A stretch of 64,000 nucleotides of DNA from Ramazzottius varieornatus (GCA_001949185.1 BDGG01000001.1:124001-188000); one strand, 5' to 3'; positions 53,789 to 63,011 are shown, counted from the first letter of the stretch. A program made the numbers and translations. The notes: a model not told the origin generated them from the sequence alone.

Positions 53789-55653
53789 TCATCGAGGGTC
53801 ACGTTGGAACTGGTCGAAAAATTCTTCGGTAGGATTGGCTCGACCATAAACTGCCTTGGCGATCTCTTCCCTTTCCTGATCTTCCAGCACTTGTTTGCGA
53901 TTAGCTTCGTCCATTCCTGCCCTAAGCAAAGCTCGTTCGGCTTTGAGCTTTTCCATCTGCGCTTCATACTCCACGCCCATGCTGCGGAAGTAATTGTCCC
54001 AGGTGTAGCCCTCCGCCCTTTCCTGGTTCTTGGCAATCTCTCTGTCGTGCTTTTGTCGCTCCCACATCTCGTAAATCTTTTTCTTCTCTTCGGGCGAGAT
54101 ACCCTTTCTGTCCCGTGGGTTCGTCGGATGCTCGTTCAGCAGGTCGCTGTTCATCGTGTTATTGATGTGGACCTTCTTGTCTTGGTTTTCTAATTCGCGA
54201 AGCCTGCGTTTACCCTCTTCCTGGTTCACAGCCTGAACGGGCAAAAATGTGCAGAGTCCACTCAAAGACAGTCAGATTCATGGTACACGTACGATAGGAA
54301 ATTATGGGATAGGCCTTTACATACGTACGTGACTGATTTACGCACTTTCCGACAGTTTTCTACGGTCGACTTCCCATTTAGCAGTCCTTTCCGCCTGTCT
54401 CATAATTTTCACCGAACTATATTTCTGCTTAATGCTTCATGTGTGTTCGACAAGATACTTTTTGAATTACTAAAATTGGACGACGGGTTCGGGAGATACA
54501 AGGAGGTAAATAATGGCCATGGTTGCCCATGACCAATGACGGTGACTGTACGAACGCGTGTATTGCTTACCAGTGATTCGTTGTAGTGGGAGACAGCCTT
54601 GTTCATCGCATGCTTCAAGTCCTTCGTGGCGTCCTCCCGTCCTCTCATCTTGGCTTCCTTGGCCATCGATTCTTTATGTGCGATATTATCCAAATGCCGT
54701 TCAAAGTCCTTTTTGGCCGCTTCCTCCCACATTTGTCTTTGCAAGTCATCCCTCTGCTTGTTGATGCTGTTCTTGATGTCCTCCGGCTGGCGAATCTTGT
54801 CGCTGTCGAACCTGCAAAGTCAATGAATGGTCAACTGCCGTTGACCGGTGTGCAAAGTTGGTATTACGTCAGGATACTTGATGGTCCGTAGATGGAGTAG
54901 TCGCCACTGGCGCCAACGGGAAGAAATGACTTGGAAGCGTTGGGATCGTTCAAGTCGTATGTGGAGGAATCTTCCTTGCGTTGGAAGTACCGTCTGTAAC
55001 CATCCACCTCGTGCGCCAGAGCCTTCTTTACTTCCTTCTGTTGCGCGTCGATCAATTGATGAGCTATTGCCTGTCGACATGTGGCTTGGTCTGGAAGTAA
55101 ACGCTAAAATTTTGGGATGAGTTTCTGAATTTGAACTTTTAGAACCCAAAACCTAGAACTTGTCGAATTTTGAAATTTCGAAAGCTTAAAAATCCGAATG
55201 TGAATTTAAATTTGACTTTTGAAAACTATGTACTGCGAACTTACCAAATGTAAGATCGCGCATCTTCTCGGCCATTTCTTGCGCCTTTCTGACATGAACC
55301 TGCCGTTGCAGATCTTCCACATGATACTGCAGAGGAACACAAAATTAGGAGTTTAGCTTTTGGAAACACTCAAATGGACAGATCAAAGCGAAAAGGTTTG
55401 ACTGCTGGGCTAGCAATGATTTATGCCAATAAAGGCGGATATGCCGACTGTCAGACTGCACGATGTTTCCAAATGTCCTGGAGTGTGGGCAGTTTTCTGT
55501 GTGGCACTGAAAAAGGTAGTGACTGTTCTGTACCGCTTGTTTGGATGCATCAGCGTCAAATATCTTTCTTCCGCGCTCTTCCAAGGTCTGACGCTTCCGT
55601 GTCAGCCTATCATGCAGCGCGGTATCGATTGGCAGTTTCGTAAAATAGCTCAT
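53789..55653 (-). CDS. RIB43A-like coiled-coil protein (RIBC1/2 family, axonemal microtubule inner protein)
   Basis: Five exons: KLPID...R..LEERGRKIFDA; LQRQV; YDLNDPNA...LP...YGPSS; SDLLNEHP...DRKGISPEE; C-terminal NPTEEFFDQFQRDPR*, the family-typical ending. Confidence 0.88.
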
Positions 55654-55795: not shown

Positions 55796-58700
55796 ATGAC
55801 TTGGATCTGGCACAAAAATCCCTACGCATATCACGTGAGTCATTTCTTCTTCAATTTATTTTTTCCAATCAAACGTCATTTTTTCGCGGAAAATATGTTC
55901 AAGGGCAAATTTATTTCAGCTCATCAAATTGTACGATGAGGGCGTGGCAGGACATTCGGCCGTGGCTATTCCGTATTACCGACCCGATGATGCTCCTGGA
56001 AAGCTATCACCGAAGATTAATCGTCCGGAAAGTGGGCGTATTTTAAGCTATGACGAACGAGAAGCTAGCTGCGTCTTTGTCAAATGCTGGGAGATTGGCG
56101 GGAGTATTCAGTACTTGTCCATCGTCAAGGATCTGTTGATGCTGTACACCTACAACGCTCCTCCAACATTCGTGCTGTACACTGACCTCTTCTGCAACTA
56201 CAACGTCACTGTAAGGTACAAAAGCACACGTTAAGAGAAGTTAGTCGTTTACGTGGGAAGGCGGAACATGAATTCGACCAGACGTTTTCCCAAGTGGCGC
56301 ACGTATCCAGGTACTAACACTGACAACGTGCGTCACTTAGGGAAATTAGTTTCCACAAGGTTATTATCGTAAGTGGCGCCCGCGCTCAGCTAAAAACAGC
56401 GAAACAGTGCGTTGCTTGATAACGCCGATATGGGGGAAATCATCTACCGACGTTTCACGTATGAACAGTTCGAAACTTTCAACTTTGGGTATCTACGATC
56501 AATTGGCTTTGGGTGTCCCGTAGAATAATGGTATGCAAGTATTTTCTGTGCGGCATTTCTTCGAGCATGGGACGTTGTGGGATCATCTGCAGTGGATGGG
56601 TACCCGTGGGATCCCTTACAGCACGGTCCTGCTGGACAGGTGGCTGATTCAGCTTCTGACTACGATCGACTGGGCGCACTCCAACCAGTTGGTATTAGTG
56701 TGAGTTTGGCATACCCGCGATGGAACTGTAGAAAAATGACTGAATTGAGTGATCGTATGGTTGCTACCTGCTTGTAGAAACCTGTCGTTGAAAAATATCT
56801 GCCTGACCGATGACGGTATGGACCTGCGCGTCGTGGACTTTTTGCCTGCCGGCATGGTCAAGGAAGTCCTGAACGGATTGTCTTCGCCGCTAAAATGCCC
56901 GAAAGGTTCTGCTGGCTTGTGTTTGTAGAAGACGTTTTCGAACAAAGTCACCGTGCTGCGGCATTTCTTCAATCTGGTCTTTTTTAAAATGATTTAGCTG
57001 GACGTGTCTGCCTTGCAAACAAAATCGAGAATTCATACCGAGTATCTAGATGTCATGGCTTTTATCATGAGAATGAGTCTACCGATTTCAAAATAGCTCA
57101 AAAAGAGGGCAGATGGAACTAAATGTGAGATTAGAAAGGGTTAAGAAACCGGAGGTAGATCTACAGCGATGCCACCACCTCCAGTAAAATTCTTCTGGAA
57201 CAAACCTTCGAAGAAGATTTCTTAGAATTTTGGTAAGTGGCTCTTTTGGCTCAGTGGTTCATATATCTAGGGATTTCACTAACATTCCATTTCAGCTGAT
57301 TTTTGATTGCTAGATGCAAGGATTTTGCCCCACAGGCGGCTGAAGGTTCAAACCTAACTGAAGCTCAAGTTTTTTGCCAGATTTCCCGTCGTTTTGCGCG
57401 TTCTGGTAGGCTCTCCATTTTTTATTAGAAAGAGCTAGCGCGAGCCAGTAGCAGCTGAGCTTGTGCGGGGCGCGAACTTCCTCGGTGAGAGCCAATCGCT
57501 TCCGGTAAAACGATCCGTCTCTTACTGCGTATTTGAAAGAGGAAAAGCTACTAGCCAAATCTCTTTTTCGGCTCTTTTCGCGCTCCCACATTTATCTACG
57601 GGAATACTCTGTAAATATTTGCTGCATCCGCGCAGTACGTACTCGTACGTAACGATGCACCCCCGTAGGGGGTTGCGCAATCCGTGAAACTGGACTGGGG
57701 CTGCACTTCACTTGTACGACGACGTACTGCGCGGACGCAGCGAATACAGTAACTTTTTTTCATACGAGTATGTTAATACCATGACTAGTTCGGTCGAGAC
57801 TTCATCACCGCAGCCCATACCACCGTCATTGTCAGTTGGCCGTTTTCTCCTACAGATGATCATATGCTGACACTCTTCAAACCCGAAAAATGGACTTCGG
57901 TCAACGACTTTGAGGCTGCCGCCTTCGTGTTGTTCCAACTCAGTCTGGTCGGCCACACAGACTACCAGCGCGTCAAGATCCTGGCCCACCCCTACTGTGT
58001 TCGGGAACACTGGTCGGAGCTCATGACAGCAGTGTCGGAGGTCCACGGTACATTATGGATGCACACATTGGACAGGCTGGTGGGCGAAGAGCACGCCGAG
58101 CAGCGGGAAGACTTTGCCAAGGAGCTGCTATCGAGGATTAAATACGCGCTGCAACACCCCATGATCAACATGGAATTGTGGGAAAGCGGCACGAATTTCA
58201 ACAACGACCAGGACGATGTCGATAAATGCCAGCCCGAACCACCTGTTCAACCGCAGCATAATCAGCCGGAGAGCAGTGTACTGGTCAGCTTCTTGGAACA
58301 AGCTTTTGAGTTTTTCCAGCACAACAGTCAAGGTAAGGCCTCGGGTGTAAAAAATCTAACAAAACAACGTTCGTTACGGCCAGAAAGTCTAGATTCAAAT
58401 GCGCCACAGGCACGACGAGAAAGTATGGGCCAATAAAAATTATTGACCACTTAAGCCTGCTTGCACAGACAGCGTTACGCCATCGTACACACTGGCTTGA
58501 TACGGCCAACGTACTGTATTCCCTCGATAGTTCTGCGAATCACGTGACTGTTCCGGTAAATATTACCCGGCGAGGATAGAAAATATTCATGCATTCAATC
58601 AAAGATTGCTCGCCAGTCAAGTAGAGTGACCGGCGACAGTCACACAAGCAGTGATATCACTGCGGGTGTAATATACTGTCCTGATGACGTAGTTCGCAGA

Positions 58701-60302
58701 ACTATCGAGGGAATACGGTACATACAAACGCTACTATTTCCGCTAGGTCATTGACCACTAAGAGTGGCTACACAAAACCGAAATTCGAACGTAGGGAACT
58801 TTCCTATTGCGTCTGGATGTCCATCTTGTCGTGTTTTCTGCCTGGTCCATAATTTGGACTGTCCCATAATTTCTCGTCGTGAATGAATTCTGAATCGCTT
58901 TTTTGAACGATATGGGTGGTAGATTGTCACTCTTCTTCTACGTAGCTTTCGTACTAGAGGTGATAATCCTAAACCCTCCGCATGGTGTACACTTATCTGT
59001 CTTTCTAAATACTGTACAATACTGTTTTTTGAATGTTAGGGGACTTTGCGAGGATCTGCCACAGCATGCTAAAATTAGTGCCGACGGACCAGCAAGCAGC
59101 GTTCAACTCGCATCACCTGGTCATGTTCGCAGAGATGTTCGACAAACAAACAGACAGCGACCGCGGTGTGGCGCACAGCCTGGCTACAGTGCTAGCCGGC
59201 TTGCTTTATGCCGGTAAATTAATATCCTCCCCAGTAATGTCACATCACCTTCACTTCTGTTTCCAACGTTGGTCTGCGTTCTCAGATGACGTGGATAAGC
59301 TAGCCTGTGCAGGCAACTTTGGTCCAAAGCTGATTCGTTTCCTGGACAAGCACCTTCAGGCACCCGACCTTCTGTGCATGCTGGCCACAGCCCTTTCCCA
59401 AATTCCTCTGTACATGTCTCGGGTCGGCTGTCTGACTCAACAACTGACCGACGTACCCGCCTTGTTCCGTTGTGCCTTCGCCCATTTCTGGGAATGGCCC
59501 ACCTTGATGCCGCTTGTCATGTGTATACTGCAGGCTGTATCAAGTAAGTATGAAAACCTTCTGTGTGACGTATTTGCGGTTCCGCCCATTGGACCGCCTT
59601 CTCGAGCCATTCCACCAGTAATAATTCAACGCTCACTGTTTACTAGTGCTTAATGGGCTGAAGAAACTGCTCGGGAGTCGGGACTCCAGAGTGATCTTCA
59701 GGCTTGATTGATTAATTGATACTCCCGATAAACAGATTCCTTTTTAGCTATGCCAGTGACGGATGTGGCAAGAACGCCGCTGGTGCCGCTGCTCATGTTG
59801 ACCATCCACTGTCACGTGGATTTCCCCTGTGAAATCAACTTGGCTCTACGGATGCTGCGTCGCTTGATACAGAAGAGCGACCTGGGCGCTTGTATGGTTA
59901 TTCGTTTCCCAGTGGGAGGTGCTTTGTACAGCCCGGTGGACACGTTTCTTCGGATACTGGAACTCCACGGGAACAAGAACAGCCTTCGAAGGGAGATCGC
60001 GCTCATCACTGTCCGACTTTGGTCGACCGAGCGGTTCTTCGCCATTCTGATGCAAGATGGCTGGCTGAAGATATTCGCGGCGCTGATGTCGGCATCCCGT
60101 CAACAAAAGGTAATCCATATTCTGTCGGAAACCTCTCTACAAACCAGTTTACGGGAATCTGCAGTAAATGCAATTTCTACAGGGCATCACGAAGCTGCTG
60201 AAGCAGTGCTTGGCTGATCGTAACTTGGTCATCATCGACAATAAAATCTACCGGATTTCAAAAGAGCCGTTCATCAAGTCGGCTGAATATTTCGATTCGT
60301 AA
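55796..60302 (+). CDS. STKLD1: STKLD1/SgK071-like pseudokinase with C-terminal helical (ARM-like) region
   Basis: Multi-exon: YHLIKLYDEGVAG (G-loop), VFVKC, VLYTDLFCNYN, FFEHGTLWD, WLIQLL...WAH, LVNLSLKNICL (catalytic loop without HRD), LRVVDF, WTSVNDFE, then Leu-rich helical repeats (59040-60302). Orthology is inferred from architecture. Confidence 0.7.
56272..56421. repeat. 81-bp palindromic repeat family, 2 units (kinase intron)
   Basis: TCCCAAGTGGCGCAC-N25-GTGCGTCACTTAGGG (56288-56342) and 56367-56421, also N25. Confidence 0.8.
57609..57749. mobile_element. MITE, second copy of the 18151 family
   Basis: Reverse complement aligns end to end with 18151-18295. Confidence 0.8.
58514..58718. 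mobile_element. Pogo/mariner-type MITE with TA TSD
   Basis: TA|CTGTATTCCCTCGATAGTTCTGCGAA ... TTCGCAGAACTATCGAGGGAATACGG|TA (26-bp TIR, 1 mismatch), intronic. Confidence 0.88.
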
Positions 60303-60497
60303 AGTCTGAGACGCAGCTGTGAGGTACTATGATTGTAGGAAAATAGCCCGTAGCAGCCGAGCAACAATTCGAAACCAGTGTCGACTTCGCGAGACATGTC
60401 CCTCTCATGCGATCTTCCCTAACGTGTGCGTTGCGCGTTTGGTGCTTTATTAGCCGCTCTCAAAATAGAAAAGTGGCATAAATCCGTTACCGGTACA

Positions 60498-61277
60498 ATG
60501 AACAAGTTAAGACATGCTTCCCATGTTATTACAATCTTATTTATGATAAACTGGGTACGATCAGAGATGCCCCCTGTCTTTTCTGGGGAAAAACTTCACG
60601 GTGTCCTCAACACCACAGCCAACACCTCCGATGCCCGTTCCCACGAGTTCAGCCCATGGTCACCTTGCACGGCTACCTGTGCGCCATCCTACCGGGTCCG
60701 TAGGCTTCTCGACTGTCCTCCTGGTCCCGACGAGCGTTGCTCCGAAGTTATGCCATGTAACACCACCCTCCCCGAGTGCGGAAGTGACAGCTACCCGGGC
60801 ATCGATGTCTATCTCAAGGTAGGCGACACTGAGAACTTCACCTGCCCCGCTCATCCACGCGAACCGGCTCTCCGCCCCGTCTGGTACCACTGGTCGAACG
60901 ACGCATGGGCGCAGTTCTACTCATCCGAAGATCAGCGCATCCTCATTCGAGACCATACCCACTTGCTGGAGCTGCGAAGTGCCACTGAGACAGACCAAGG
61001 CTCGTATAAATGTGTACTGAGGTATCCGGATGGGAAAGTGAAGGCGGCGTATTATTACCATATCAAAGTCTCTCGGCATTTTACGCTGTTGTTTGAGATA
61101 TTAATGGGCGTGGCAGCGGTTGTTCTGTTAGCCTTGATTGCATTGATTGTGTACAGTTACTGTTTGCCAAATTCGAAAGGTACCCTACCGTGTTTTACGA
61201 AAAAGGAACCAGCGAAGACACCGTCTGAAACTAATTATACTTTACTGAGCGAAAACCCGGAAACCGTGATAAAATGA
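60498..61277 (+). CDS. Intronless type-I membrane protein: signal peptide, 6-Cys TSP1-like hairpin, single Ig domain, TM (TMEM81/SPACA1-like), 259 aa
   Basis: Signal MNKLRHASHVITILFMINWVRS; WSPCTATC..YR...CPPGPDERC...C...CG; Ig cysteines FTC...W...DQGSYKC; TM LLFEILMGVAAVVLLALIALIVYSYC; short cytoplasmic tail. Confidence 0.85.
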   Translation: MNKLRHASHVITILFMINWVRSEMPPVFSGEKLHGVLNTTANTSDARSHEFSPWSPCTATCAPSYRVRRLLDCPPGPDERCSEVMPCNTTLPECGSDSYPGIDVYLKVGDTENFTCPAHPREPALRPVWYHWSNDAWAQFYSSEDQRILIRDHTHLLELRSATETDQGSYKCVLRYPDGKVKAAYYYHIKVSRHFTLLFEILMGVAAVVLLALIALIVYSYCLPNSKGTLPCFTKKEPAKTPSETNYTLLSENPETVIK

Positions 61278-61482
61278 CTGACAATCAACAATCAATGTGT
61301 ACCACTAACAACAACAAACTCGAGAACGGAGTATAACACAAGAAAAACATAACGAGAACTAGTAGAACAAAAATCAACATAAAAACAGGTAGTATACCAA
61401 AACAAACAGAAATCCAACACGCACACAACGATAACAGCTTCCAAGAAGAACAAATAAAAGATAAAAATGAAAGAACGCATTT

Positions 61483-63011
61483 TCATGGTCCGTATAAGTC
61501 TTGTGGTTCGAGTACGATAACAATTTTCTGCAAGCTCTCCACAGTAAAAATGGTCTTCTCCAGCTCATTCAACGTCTTCTCCAAAGCAGTCTTCCGTTTG
61601 ATCTTGGTCTGGTTGTCCAACACGACGGATAGAGCTTGGAATTCGTGCATGGCTTCGTCAAAGTTGTACTTTAGTTTCCGAAGAATGTCGGCGCGTTCTT
61701 CTTCCGTCAACCACCGGTACTTGGACTGATGCGCCAGTAACTCGGCTCCACGAGCTGCGGACAGTTGGGCTCTGTGCCGGTCGATGGCCGATTTTTCATA
61801 TCTCTTGATATACTTCGGGACAATACCAAAACTCTACAAGAAAGAATATTTTTACCATAAATCGATTGAGTAAGATCGGAAAGGATTTCGACCAGATTGC
61901 TGTTACCAGTGGCGCATGCATTCAGCCGACAGCGCAGAAAGGGTGCGCCTCTCGAGATATCAAATAAACTCGACAAGATCGGATTCTGAGTGGCGCACGC
62001 TCTCAGCTAATCCTAAACAGAGCGTGCGTCATTTGGCAAAACGATCTGGAGAAATCATTTCCAAGCACCCAGATATTCACTCGGACTCTTCTCACTTTCT
62101 TCAGTACGAATTCATTCGCCAATCCGGATTTGGCGTCGAGTATGACTGTATCGCCATGTCGGGTGTCCACAAATTTGGGTATTGGCTCCTTGGTTTGGAT
62201 GCTCAGGACCTTCATCTTGGTTTTGGCTACCATGTCCCGACTGAGGGGAAGTCTATAGGTCGGTTTCCAGTCAGGTTTCTTCGGAATCGATTCCCGAAGC
62301 TCCACACAAGGATCGAAAGGCTTCGCTGCAAATGTGTAGTTATCAAGACATGGGTGGTTAAGGAACTACCAAAAAATTACCTGGCGGAGGACACGGCTCT
62401 ACTCGGGGACGTTTATGCAGAAACTCGGTGGGTCCCGCCAGCGGTGTATGCGCATAACCGAACGTCCTCCGAGGTCTTTTTGCGTCGCGCAGTTCTTTCT
62501 TCACAGCGTCGGAAAACTGGCAAACATGTCTGTGAATGTGGAAAAATGATGTCACTGTTTCTAATATCGCTAGATAATCGTCGCAGATGTTCACCTTGGC
62601 GGTCGAATAACCTCCGACTGGATCGCCGGGCGTAAGTTGTAGACGGATTCGGTAAAGAATTCTCCGTAATTTTTGACAGGGGGTTTCGGACCATACGATG
62701 TGAACATTGTTGACGTAACTTTTGGAATGAGACAATCTTCGCCTGTGGAAACTAATTATAAGTTGGCAAAATCGAGTAAGCTGTTTTTCGTACGAAGAGA
62801 CGTTTTTAGAATTTTCGACAGTCTTAACTGGATGGAGTAACTAAGCAGCATCCAAGTCCCAGTAAGCAGGGTTCGTCCCAGCTCGTCCAGCTGTCAAATA
62901 AGCTTTAGTGTTTATAGAATGACGATTTTATCGTAATTACCTGTAACAGCCTGTAACATAATTACCTGTAAAACAGTCTGGATATTGTCGACAGTACTGA
63001 CTGCGGATCAT
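61483..63011 (-). CDS. ENKUR: Enkurin
   Basis: Spliced peptides ESVYNLRP...RPPRHVCQFSDAVK...RTFG...PTEFLHK; FVDTRHGD...SGL...FVLKK|SFGIVPKYI; LTEEERADILRKLK...FQALSVVLD...KRKTALEKTLNELEKTI. Start at 63011 (or 62707) is uncertain. Confidence 0.92.
61885..62038. repeat. 81-bp palindromic repeat family, 2 units (enkurin intron)
   Basis: Units 61903-61957 and 61984-62038, both N25, period 81, linker aaactcgacaagatcg. Confidence 0.8.

What the first reader, a model, noticed from the sequence alone, without database searches (positions are those of the whole stretch)
60498..61277. Candidate invertebrate TMEM81/SPACA1-like sperm-egg interaction protein
Seen: a single-exon type-I membrane protein with 8 ectodomain Cys: CTATC-x3-YR...CPPGPDERC...C...CG, then one Ig domain (LKVGDTENFTC...W...HLLELRSATETDQGSYKC...VKAAYYYHIKV) and a TM. 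Known (from recall): vertebrate TMEM81 has an intronless CDS with the same order CTVTCGLGYK...CEVGPDG...C...C...CG plus Ig (DSGTYRC...VKRLYFGLRV), SPACA1 has a similar Cys hairpin, and TMEM81 forms a sperm trimer with IZUMO1 and SPACA6 that is required for fertilization in fish and mice. Inference: this may be a protostome member of that family, supported by its position between axonemal/testis genes, which would extend the fertilization module beyond vertebrates. Rival explanation: a generic TSP1+Ig adhesion protein.
Basis: partly seen in the sequence, partly recalled or inferred. Interest (0 to 1): 0.85.

Follow-up and report, generated by a model that had tools for sequence, protein, structure and literature searches.

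The report
Tardigrade TMEM81-like TSR–Ig membrane protein
A real, intronless tardigrade gene encodes a small membrane protein (one thrombospondin-type repeat, one Ig domain, one anchor) built like the vertebrate sperm proteins TMEM81 and SPACA1 and lying beside sperm-tail genes. Neither true kinship with those proteins nor expression in sperm could be proven with the tools at hand.

Summary
Window 60498-61277 (+) is an uninterrupted 259-codon ORF of Ramazzottius varieornatus. It reads signal peptide, six-Cys thrombospondin type-1 repeat (TSR), one Ig domain, TM helix and a conserved 38-aa tail.

It is single-copy and has orthologues in at least four other tardigrade assemblies. A full-length homologue exists in the hemichordate Ptychodera flava, so the family is probably of bilaterian age.

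For TMEM81/SPACA1 kinship:
- Size, domain order and eight ectodomain Cys are the same.
- The ESM Atlas puts TMEM81 and SPACA1 clusters first, for the whole protein and for the ectodomain alone.
- IZUMO1 and SPACA6 are among the top 20 Foldseek PDB matches.
- Neighbours include enkurin and RIB43A genes, and the genome keeps two DCST-like genes and a TMDD1-like gene.

Against:
- An exhaustive HMM search of 1.84 billion proteins reached no other protein of this build, vertebrate ones included.
- Pfam and PDB profiles see only a canonical TSR and a generic Ig.
- No IZUMO domain is found in the genome.
- The species is parthenogenetic, and expression could not be tested.

Verdict: a plausible (about 0.45-0.5) but unproven first invertebrate TMEM81/SPACA1-like protein. 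The scan noted this same stretch once before (s1-808278).

The parts
60498..61277 (+). Complete intronless CDS (259 aa plus TGA) of the TSR-Ig-TM protein. It corresponds to R. varieornatus RvY_00071, whose public model is truncated.
60498..60563 (+). Signal-peptide-like leader (residues 1-22). It is poorly conserved in sequence but hydrophobic in the orthologues.
60567..60605 (+). Tardigrade-conserved N-terminal motif (residues 24-36, around P-x-F-x-G-x-K-L-H-G), followed by a variable glycosylated linker.
60645..60782 (+). Thrombospondin type-1 repeat (residues 50-95) with six Cys, W54 and R66-x-R68, ending in C-G directly before the Ig domain. It is the best-conserved part: 46% identity to the hemichordate homologue.
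60795..61073 (+). Single Ig domain (residues 100-192) with the C116-C172 pair and a very conserved F-G hairpin.
61086..61160 (+). Transmembrane helix (residues 197-221).
61161..61274 (+). Cytoplasmic tail (residues 222-259) with two juxtamembrane Cys. The C-terminus, ending in I-K, is conserved across tardigrades.
61453..61458 (+). AATAAA in the A-rich 3' region shared with the convergent enkurin gene. It is a candidate polyadenylation signal.
61483..61710 (-). Context: last coding exon of the convergent neighbour, holding an Enkurin domain (E 4.5e-14).
53789..54744 (-). Context: two exons of a RIB43A (RIBC-type axonemal microtubule inner protein) gene, E 1.6e-15 and 0.023.

Best explanation
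The gene encodes a type I surface protein whose ectodomain is one thrombospondin type-1 repeat fused without a linker to one Ig domain. I read it as an invertebrate member, or pre-duplication relative, of the vertebrate TMEM81/SPACA1 group of sperm membrane proteins.

Proposed mechanism (inferred, not shown): it is made in male germ cells and sits in the sperm or acrosomal membrane. Through its conserved TSR and the F-G face of its Ig domain it acts in cis as a scaffold subunit of the ancient DCST1/2-TMDD1(-FAM187) fertilization assembly. In vertebrates the corresponding role is that TMEM81 links IZUMO1 with SPACA6, and its N-terminus is predicted to cap the DCST1/2 tip. The conserved tail with two juxtamembrane Cys would anchor or sort it.

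Shown here: the gene, its domains, its conservation in tardigrades and a hemichordate, the axonemal neighbours, and the presence of DCST-like and TMDD1-like genes. Inferred: homology to TMEM81/SPACA1, sperm expression and the binding partners.
For: 1. Architecture: SP, six-Cys three-stranded-type module, Ig, TM, 259 aa, eight ectodomain Cys. PMC11052572 describes TMEM81 as a three-stranded sheet plus hinge plus Ig with four disulfides.

2. ESM Atlas, whole protein: the five best clusters are TMEM81 or SPACA1 (0.94-0.95, 202-211 of 256 features). UNC5-like and FAM187A clusters share 177-179 features.

3. ESM Atlas, ectodomain only: TMEM81 clusters rank 1 and 2 (0.87, 189-192 features). TSP1+Ig proteins such as ADAMTSL and UNC5D score 0.85-0.86 with only 147-160 features.

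4. Foldseek against the PDB: IZUMO1 (5f4e) is rank 9 at 2.1e-5 and SPACA6 (7ta2) rank 17 at 4.6e-5 with 20% identity, among at least 500 Ig matches. Their alignments (112-146 columns) reach beyond the Ig domain.

5. Pfam Izumo-Ig gives weak hits in 3 of 7 family members, best 0.006.

6. A tardigrade-only profile finds a full-length homologue in Ptychodera flava (E 1.1e-5 in 1.84 billion proteins, one stretch covering TSR, Ig and TM; pairwise BLASTP 5e-12). The gene therefore probably predates the protostome-deuterostome split.

7. Context: a convergent enkurin gene and a nearby RIB43A gene.

8. The genome keeps two DC_STAMP-domain loci, at least one of which (contig 8) has a RING-like finger ORF downstream. 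It also has a gene with a signal peptide, an extracellular Death domain and a TM helix, which is TMDD1-like.

9. The strongest conservation is in the TSR and the Ig F-G hairpin, which fits a conserved cis partner rather than a fast-evolving egg-binding face.
Against: 1. An exhaustive HMM search gave 92 proteins at E <= 0.001. Apart from tardigrade sequences and the hemichordate protein, the rest were mostly long multi-Ig proteins. None of the nine small hits read out had this build apart from the tardigrade sequences and the hemichordate protein; the names of the remaining hits were not looked up, so none could be identified as TMEM81 or SPACA1.

2. Word-indexed searches with the protein, the hemichordate homologue and the family profile named no TMEM81 or SPACA1.

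3. Pfam and PDB profiles call the N-domain a canonical TSR (F-spondin 1vex 3.4e-4; circumsporozoite TSR 2.1e-4; TSP_1 or TSP1_spondin in 5 of 7 members). They call the Ig generic (titin, Robo, contactin).

5. The N-domain of the model is low-confidence (pLDDT about 50), so its packing against the Ig domain could not be compared.

6. No IZUMO four-helix domain is found in the genome.

7. R. varieornatus is parthenogenetic and only females have been seen (PMC11175437, PMC11191345). An intact gene could therefore mean a non-sperm role.

8. Two 2026 papers state that TMEM81 is restricted to vertebrates.

9. Atlas scores are embedding similarities, not alignments, and may partly reflect shared architecture.
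Confidence: 0.45

Rival explanations
1. It is a generic TSR+Ig cell-surface adhesion or receptor protein that shares only its architecture with TMEM81/SPACA1. On this view it acts in somatic or female tissues, for example in matrix or guidance-cue binding through the TSR, and lies next to sperm-tail genes by chance.
Against: The only small SP-TSR-Ig-TM protein the searches turned up outside tardigrades was the hemichordate homologue. The Atlas feature counts favour TMEM81/SPACA1 (184-211) over UNC5 and ADAMTSL (147-179). IZUMO1 and SPACA6 are both in the Foldseek top 20. The same genome keeps other sperm-linked genes intact (DCST-like, TMDD1-like, enkurin, RIB43A), so intactness does not argue for a somatic role.
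Confidence: 0.33
2. It belongs to the same family but works like SPACA1 rather than TMEM81. In that case it is an inner-acrosomal-membrane protein whose conserved cytoplasmic tail anchors the acrosome to the nuclear envelope or cytoskeleton during spermiogenesis, and it is not a subunit of the gamete-fusion assembly.
For: SPACA1 clusters score as high as TMEM81 in the whole-protein Atlas search (0.95, 211 features). The 38-aa tail is conserved across tardigrades, 13-27 of 35-38 positions identical. From recall only, this fits SPACA1, which has a long functional tail, better than TMEM81, whose tail is very short.
Against: With the tail and TM removed, only TMEM81 clusters stay on top and SPACA1 clusters drop out of the rows shown. 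Nothing here tests localisation.
Confidence: 0.12
3. In R. varieornatus itself the gene is a functionless relic of a recently lost male function. It is still intact only because parthenogenesis is young.
For: The species is reported as all-female. The Hypsibius exemplaris model (OQV13075.1), from another parthenogen, loses the second half of the Ig domain and repeats an N-terminal segment instead.
Against: No stop or frameshift is present, and every structural Cys, W and R is kept. Neighbouring and unlinked sperm-type genes also look intact. This concerns the gene's present use, not what the protein is.
Confidence: 0.1

Closest known systems
TMEM81 (vertebrate sperm protein, subunit of the TMEM81-IZUMO1-SPACA6 trimer and of the SPARK complex)
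   Same: Both are type I membrane proteins of about 255-260 aa. Both have an N-terminal three-stranded, disulfide-rich module placed directly before one Ig domain, with four ectodomain disulfides (PMC11052572). TMEM81 clusters are the nearest neighbours in the ESM Atlas for the whole protein and for the ectodomain. From recall, the TMEM81 CDS is also intronless and starts its Cys module with C-T-x-T-C-G.
   Different: No significant alignment-based similarity was obtained. The tardigrade N-domain keeps the canonical TSR Trp and Arg-x-Arg, which (from recall) TMEM81 has lost. The tail is long and conserved. The partners IZUMO1 and SPACA6 have no detectable counterpart in the genome. TMEM81 is reported as vertebrate-restricted.
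SPACA1 (acrosomal membrane protein; Pfam PF27947)
   Same: It has the same overall build and similar size. Its Atlas scores equal those of TMEM81 for the whole protein, and some TMEM81 clusters carry the SPACA1 Pfam family. It also has a sizeable cytoplasmic tail (recall).
   Different: PF27947 is not in the local Pfam copy, so it could not be tested. SPACA1 clusters are not among the rows shown when only the ectodomain is queried.
IZUMO1 and SPACA6 (IST superfamily)
   Same: The Ig domain is preceded by a disulfide-bonded beta hinge. Both are in the Foldseek top 20 (5f4e 2.1e-5; 7ta2 4.6e-5). Pfam Izumo-Ig gives weak hits.
Canonical TSR proteins (F-spondin, thrombospondin-1, properdin, BAI1, circumsporozoite/TRAP, UNC5, ADAMTSL)
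   Same: The N-domain matches the TSR register: W-S-x-C-[ST]-x-T-C, then R-x-R, then four further Cys. PDB profile hits are 1vex at 3.4e-4 and 9cca at 2.1e-4, and TSP_1 or TSP1_spondin hit 5 of 7 members.
   Different: It has a single shortened TSR with one Trp instead of two or three. It is fused to one Ig domain and a TM helix in a 259-aa protein. UNC5 has the Ig domains before the TSRs, and the others are large multidomain or secreted proteins.
FAM187A / SPE-40 (sperm Ig protein conserved in invertebrates)
   Same: It is a type I Ig-domain sperm membrane protein. An arthropod FAM187A cluster appears at 0.90 in the Atlas.
   Different: FAM187 has two Ig-like domains, about 400-440 aa and no TSR, and it shares fewer features (177).

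Membership tests
TMEM81/SPACA1 family | Type I membrane protein of about 250-300 aa with a signal peptide and one C-terminal TM helix | tested here: met
   259 aa, a hydrophobic leader and a TM helix at about 197-221
TMEM81/SPACA1 family | N-terminal three-stranded, disulfide-rich module directly abutting a single Ig domain, with four ectodomain disulfides (PMC11052572) | tested here: inconclusive
   By sequence it has a six-Cys TSR (a three-stranded fold) ending in C-G 22 residues before the Ig Cys, so 6+2 Cys in all. The AF2 model of this part has pLDDT of about 50, so the geometry and disulfide pairing were not verified.
TMEM81/SPACA1 family | Significant sequence or profile similarity to TMEM81 or SPACA1 (e.g. 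Pfam PF27947) | tested here: not met
   No TMEM81- or SPACA1-like protein was recognised at E <= 0.001 among 1.84 billion proteins, or at E <= 10 in the word-indexed searches. PF27947 is absent from the local Pfam copy, so a direct profile test was not possible. Only the embedding similarity is positive.
TMEM81/SPACA1 family | Ig domain structurally closest to those of IZUMO1 and SPACA6 | tested here: inconclusive
TMEM81/SPACA1 family | Testis or sperm-specific expression | not testable with these tools
The species is parthenogenetic. The axonemal neighbours are only indirect evidence.
TMEM81/SPACA1 family | Complex with IZUMO1 and SPACA6 (TMEM81) and contact with FAM187A and DCST1/2 (SPARK) | tested here: inconclusive
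   No IZUMO domain is found in the genome. DCST-like and TMDD1-like genes are present. FAM187 could not be identified, and no complex prediction was run.
Thrombospondin type-1 repeat (TSR) domain | W-x-x-C-[ST]-x-T-C ... R-x-R ... six Cys in the TSR order | tested here: met
   The family profile hits solved TSRs at E 2e-4 to 7e-3. TSP_1 or TSP1_spondin hit 5 of 7 members, best 4.9e-5. The single-sequence score is below Pfam's cut-off (15.1 against 21.6 bits). W54, R66, R68 and all six Cys are invariant.
Immunoglobulin superfamily domain | Beta-sandwich with a Cys...Trp...Cys core and D-x-G-x-Y-x-C | tested here: met

The most novel reading that the evidence does not exclude
This is the first TMEM81/SPACA1-type protein outside vertebrates, present in tardigrades and a hemichordate. 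It would show that the 'three-stranded sheet plus hinge' of TMEM81 (and, by extension, the IZUMO/SPACA6 hinge) is a degenerate thrombospondin type-1 repeat. It would also show that the TMEM81 arm of the sperm fertilization complex already co-existed with DCST1/2 and TMDD1 in the bilaterian ancestor, before IZUMO1 and SPACA6 arose.
Probability: 0.4. Interest if true: 0.8.

Novelty: new member of a known kind. Interest (0 to 1): 0.6.

Why it matters
Current literature holds that TMEM81, IZUMO1 and SPACA6 are vertebrate inventions added to an older DCST1/2-TMDD1-FAM187 core (SPARK preprint 10.64898/2026.05.13.724128; PMC13319360). A bona fide TMEM81/SPACA1 relative in tardigrades and hemichordates would move one of these 'vertebrate-specific' parts back to the bilaterian ancestor. 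It would also give its N-terminal module an evolutionary origin, the TSR. And it would offer a partner to test with DCST, TMDD1 and FAM187 in invertebrates, where the molecular basis of sperm-egg fusion is poorly known. If the link fails, the result is still useful. It defines a small, conserved TSR-Ig membrane protein family of unknown role and corrects a mis-modelled gene in the reference tardigrade genome.

Tried and rejected
1. Retrieving vertebrate TMEM81/SPACA1 sequences for a profile-profile test. All three word-indexed searches returned only family members and one weak Ig protein. The exhaustive search returned no recognisable TMEM81 or SPACA1. Pfam PF27947 is not in the local library.

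2. Deepening the alignment from metagenomes. The protein-pattern scan and a degenerate DNA pattern both came back blank.

3. Structure. The first AF2 run with three sequences was useless (pLDDT 40). The second, on the ectodomain with seven sequences, gave a good Ig domain but a poor TSR. The hinge geometry could therefore not be compared, and pdb_via_wide was not worth running.

6. The upstream neighbour (about 57864-60217, +) has no Pfam or PDB match.

7. Complex prediction was not run. The direct TMEM81 partners in SPARK are FAM187A and the DCST1/2 tip. FAM187 could not be identified in this genome, the DCST genes are multi-exon and long, and TMDD1 is not predicted to touch TMEM81, so a blank would have meant nothing.

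8. Literature. No paper in the library links TMEM81 or SPACA1 to a TSR or to invertebrates, and none mentions RvY_00071 or BV898_12732.

9. Multi-exon neighbours and the TMDD1-like and DCST-like genes were read exon by exon.

Full report
**Observation**

Window 60498-61277 (+) is an uninterrupted ORF of 259 codons, from an ATG to a TGA stop, with an in-frame stop upstream at 60420.
- Cys residues lie at 57, 61, 73, 81, 87 and 94 (N-terminal module), at 116 and 172 (Ig pair), and at 222 and 232 just inside the membrane.
- The strongest hydrophobic stretch is at about 197-221. There is a hydrophobic leader at the N-terminus and four ectodomain N-glycosylation sequons.
- Pfam 'ig' passes its curated cut-off (29 against 21.8 bits, residues 104-181). 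TSP_1 and TSP1_spondin appear below cut-off at residues 50-82, and Izumo-Ig at E 0.12.

**Source and gene model**

The genome has 55,842,812 bases in 200 contigs. That is exactly the published Ramazzottius varieornatus assembly (supplement 1 of PMC11191345).

GenBank GAU87181.1 (RvY_00071, 'hypothetical protein', 207 aa) is identical to residues 24-207 of the ORF and then diverges. The public model therefore starts at an internal Met, lacks the leader, and splices out part of the TM helix.

The uninterrupted ORF is the better model. It is collinear from leader to the C-terminal I-K with orthologues of 79%, 46% and 40% identity, which were themselves called as single ORFs. The gene is single-copy in its genome.

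**Family and age**

A profile of three tardigrade sequences was run with HMMER over 1.84 billion representative proteins. It found five tardigrade-type sequences, including Hypsibius exemplaris OQV13075.1. The next hits were long multi-Ig proteins.

One further small protein matched in a single stretch spanning TSR, Ig and TM. This is XP_070571335.1 of the hemichordate Ptychodera flava (248 aa, E 1.1e-5; pairwise BLASTP 5e-12, 27% identity).
- All six N-module Cys, W54, R66 and R68 are invariant in every sequence that covers them.
- The TSR is the best-conserved part (19 of 41 positions identical between phyla), followed by the Ig F-G hairpin.

The family is thus present in Ecdysozoa and Deuterostomia and is probably of bilaterian age.

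**What the domains are**

With the seven-sequence profile, solved TSRs are hit over the whole N-module: F-spondin 1vex at 3.4e-4, the circumsporozoite TSR at 2.1e-4 and BAI1 at 7e-3. The Ig part hits titin, Robo, contactin and NCAM. TSP_1 or TSP1_spondin match 5 of 7 members (best 4.9e-5), and Izumo-Ig matches 3 of 7 (best 0.006). By sequence the N-module is therefore a bona fide, shortened TSR with one Trp and an R-x-R motif. It is joined to the Ig domain without a linker.

**Test of the TMEM81/SPACA1 idea**

Positive evidence:
- The ESM Atlas does hold these families. For the whole protein it gives TMEM81 and SPACA1 clusters as the five best (0.94-0.95, 202-211 of 256 features). UNC5-like and FAM187A clusters follow with 177-179 features.
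- With leader, TM and tail removed, TMEM81 clusters are still ranks 1 and 2 (0.87, 189-192 features). TSP1+Ig proteins nearly tie in cosine (0.85-0.86) but share only 147-160 features.
- By the tool's own calibration, 170 or more shared features is typical of same-family hits. That calibration was not measured for parts of proteins.
- The AF2 model of the ectodomain (seven sequences; mean pLDDT 66) has a good Ig domain (75-87) and a poor TSR (about 50).
- Foldseek against the PDB places IZUMO1 at rank 9 (5f4e, 2.1e-5) and SPACA6 at rank 17 (7ta2, 4.6e-5, 20% identity) among at least 500 Ig matches. Their alignments (112-146 columns) extend past the Ig domain.

Limits and negative evidence:
- No alignment-based search reached a TMEM81 or SPACA1 protein.
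- The SPACA1 Pfam model is not in the local library, and no TMEM81 chain was among the PDB matches listed.

It was not a fair test.

PMC11052572 describes TMEM81 as a three-stranded sheet plus hinge plus Ig with four disulfides. That fits a TSR-like module, since a TSR is three-stranded with three disulfides. From recall only, human TMEM81 and SPACA1 begin their Cys module with C-T-V-T-C-G, the TSR signature. I could not verify this with a tool.

**Context**

The gene converges on an enkurin-domain gene whose last exon ends about 200 bp away (E 4.5e-14). A RIB43A gene lies at 53789-54744 (E 1.6e-15). Both families are known as components of motile axonemes. From general knowledge, not tested here, tardigrades have motile axonemes only in sperm. 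The immediate upstream gene has no recognisable family.

Elsewhere the genome has:
- two DC_STAMP-domain loci (E 1.7e-43 and 4.7e-17), at least one of which, on contig 8, is followed by a Cys-rich RING-like ORF;
- a gene with a signal peptide, an extracellular Death domain and a TM exon, i.e. TMDD1-like. This agrees with the SPARK preprint's statement that TMDD1 occurs in tardigrades.

No IZUMO four-helix domain or HAP2 was found, though those searches had no positive control.

The preprint also reports that FAM187A bridges the TMEM81 trimer to DCST1/2-TMDD1, and that the TMEM81 N-terminus is predicted to shield the DCST1/2 tip. That gives a concrete role a TMEM81-like protein could have without IZUMO1 or SPACA6.

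**Caveats**

- R. varieornatus is parthenogenetic and only females have been observed. An intact gene may therefore be a young relic or may have a non-sperm role.
- Other sperm-linked genes in the same genome look intact too. Unverified scan notes also report CatSper1 and CatSper2.

**Verdict**

I put about 0.45 on a sperm-type TMEM81/SPACA1-family protein, 0.33 on an unrelated generic TSR+Ig surface protein, and the rest on variants (SPACA1-like acrosomal role, relic).

Two 2026 papers state that TMEM81 is vertebrate-restricted, and no paper in the library links TMEM81 or SPACA1 to a TSR or to invertebrates. If confirmed, this would be a real extension.

Noticed in passing
window 60498-61277; GenBank GAU87181.1 (P0093): The public model RvY_00071 (207 aa) starts at Met24, so it lacks the signal peptide. 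It diverges after residue 207 inside the TM helix, as if a false intron had been removed. The uninterrupted ORF agrees with the orthologues to the C-terminus.
   Followed up: yes
P0001/P0094 and P0002 (ENA-derived orthologues), C-termini: These predicted proteins continue past the conserved ...I-K end with a Trp and a low-complexity tail. In R. varieornatus that position is the TGA stop, and the read-through of its A-rich 3' region looks similar. The extensions are most likely TGA read as Trp by the gene caller, not real sequence. The long N-terminal extensions of P0001 and P0094 are probably upstream read-through as well.
   Followed up: partly
P0004 = Hypsibius exemplaris OQV13075.1 (BV898_12732): After the first half of the Ig domain this model switches to a repeat of its own N-terminal segment (...ISMVLDFYEVTGLIPIFSG...) and lacks the F-G strands, TM helix and tail. 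This could be a partial tandem duplication, a mis-assembly, or decay of the gene in this parthenogenetic species.
   Followed up: no
window 61483-61710 (-) and further exons to about 62735: A convergent neighbour encodes an Enkurin domain (E 4.5e-14). The two genes' ends lie about 200 bp apart in an A-rich stretch (AT skew 0.36 at 61200-61599).
   Followed up: partly
window 53789-54744 (-): Two exons of a RIB43A (RIBC1/2-type axonemal microtubule inner protein) gene. It appears intact in an all-female species.
   Followed up: partly
G000:C7, locus L009 1414-1842 and 1990-2373 (+): A TMDD1-like gene. One exon encodes a signal peptide followed by a Death domain (Pfam Death, E 3.6e-4), and the next exon encodes a TM helix and a Cys-rich juxtamembrane stretch. 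The Death domain would therefore be extracellular, the hallmark of the sperm protein TMDD1.
   Followed up: partly
G000:C3:2629971-2630483 (L002) and G000:C8:1036398-1037079 (L003/L004): Two DC_STAMP-domain loci, candidates for DCST1/2 (Sneaky, SPE-42/49 type). The C8 locus has a downstream ORF (L004 2429-2815) with a RING-like Cys pattern. The TAG inside the C8 match lies at the edge of the match and looks like an intron boundary.
   Followed up: partly
window about 57864-60217 (+): A multi-exon gene immediately upstream (ORF pieces of 190, 206 and 155 aa) has no Pfam or PDB match. Its claimed sperm or axoneme nature could not be checked.
   Followed up: partly
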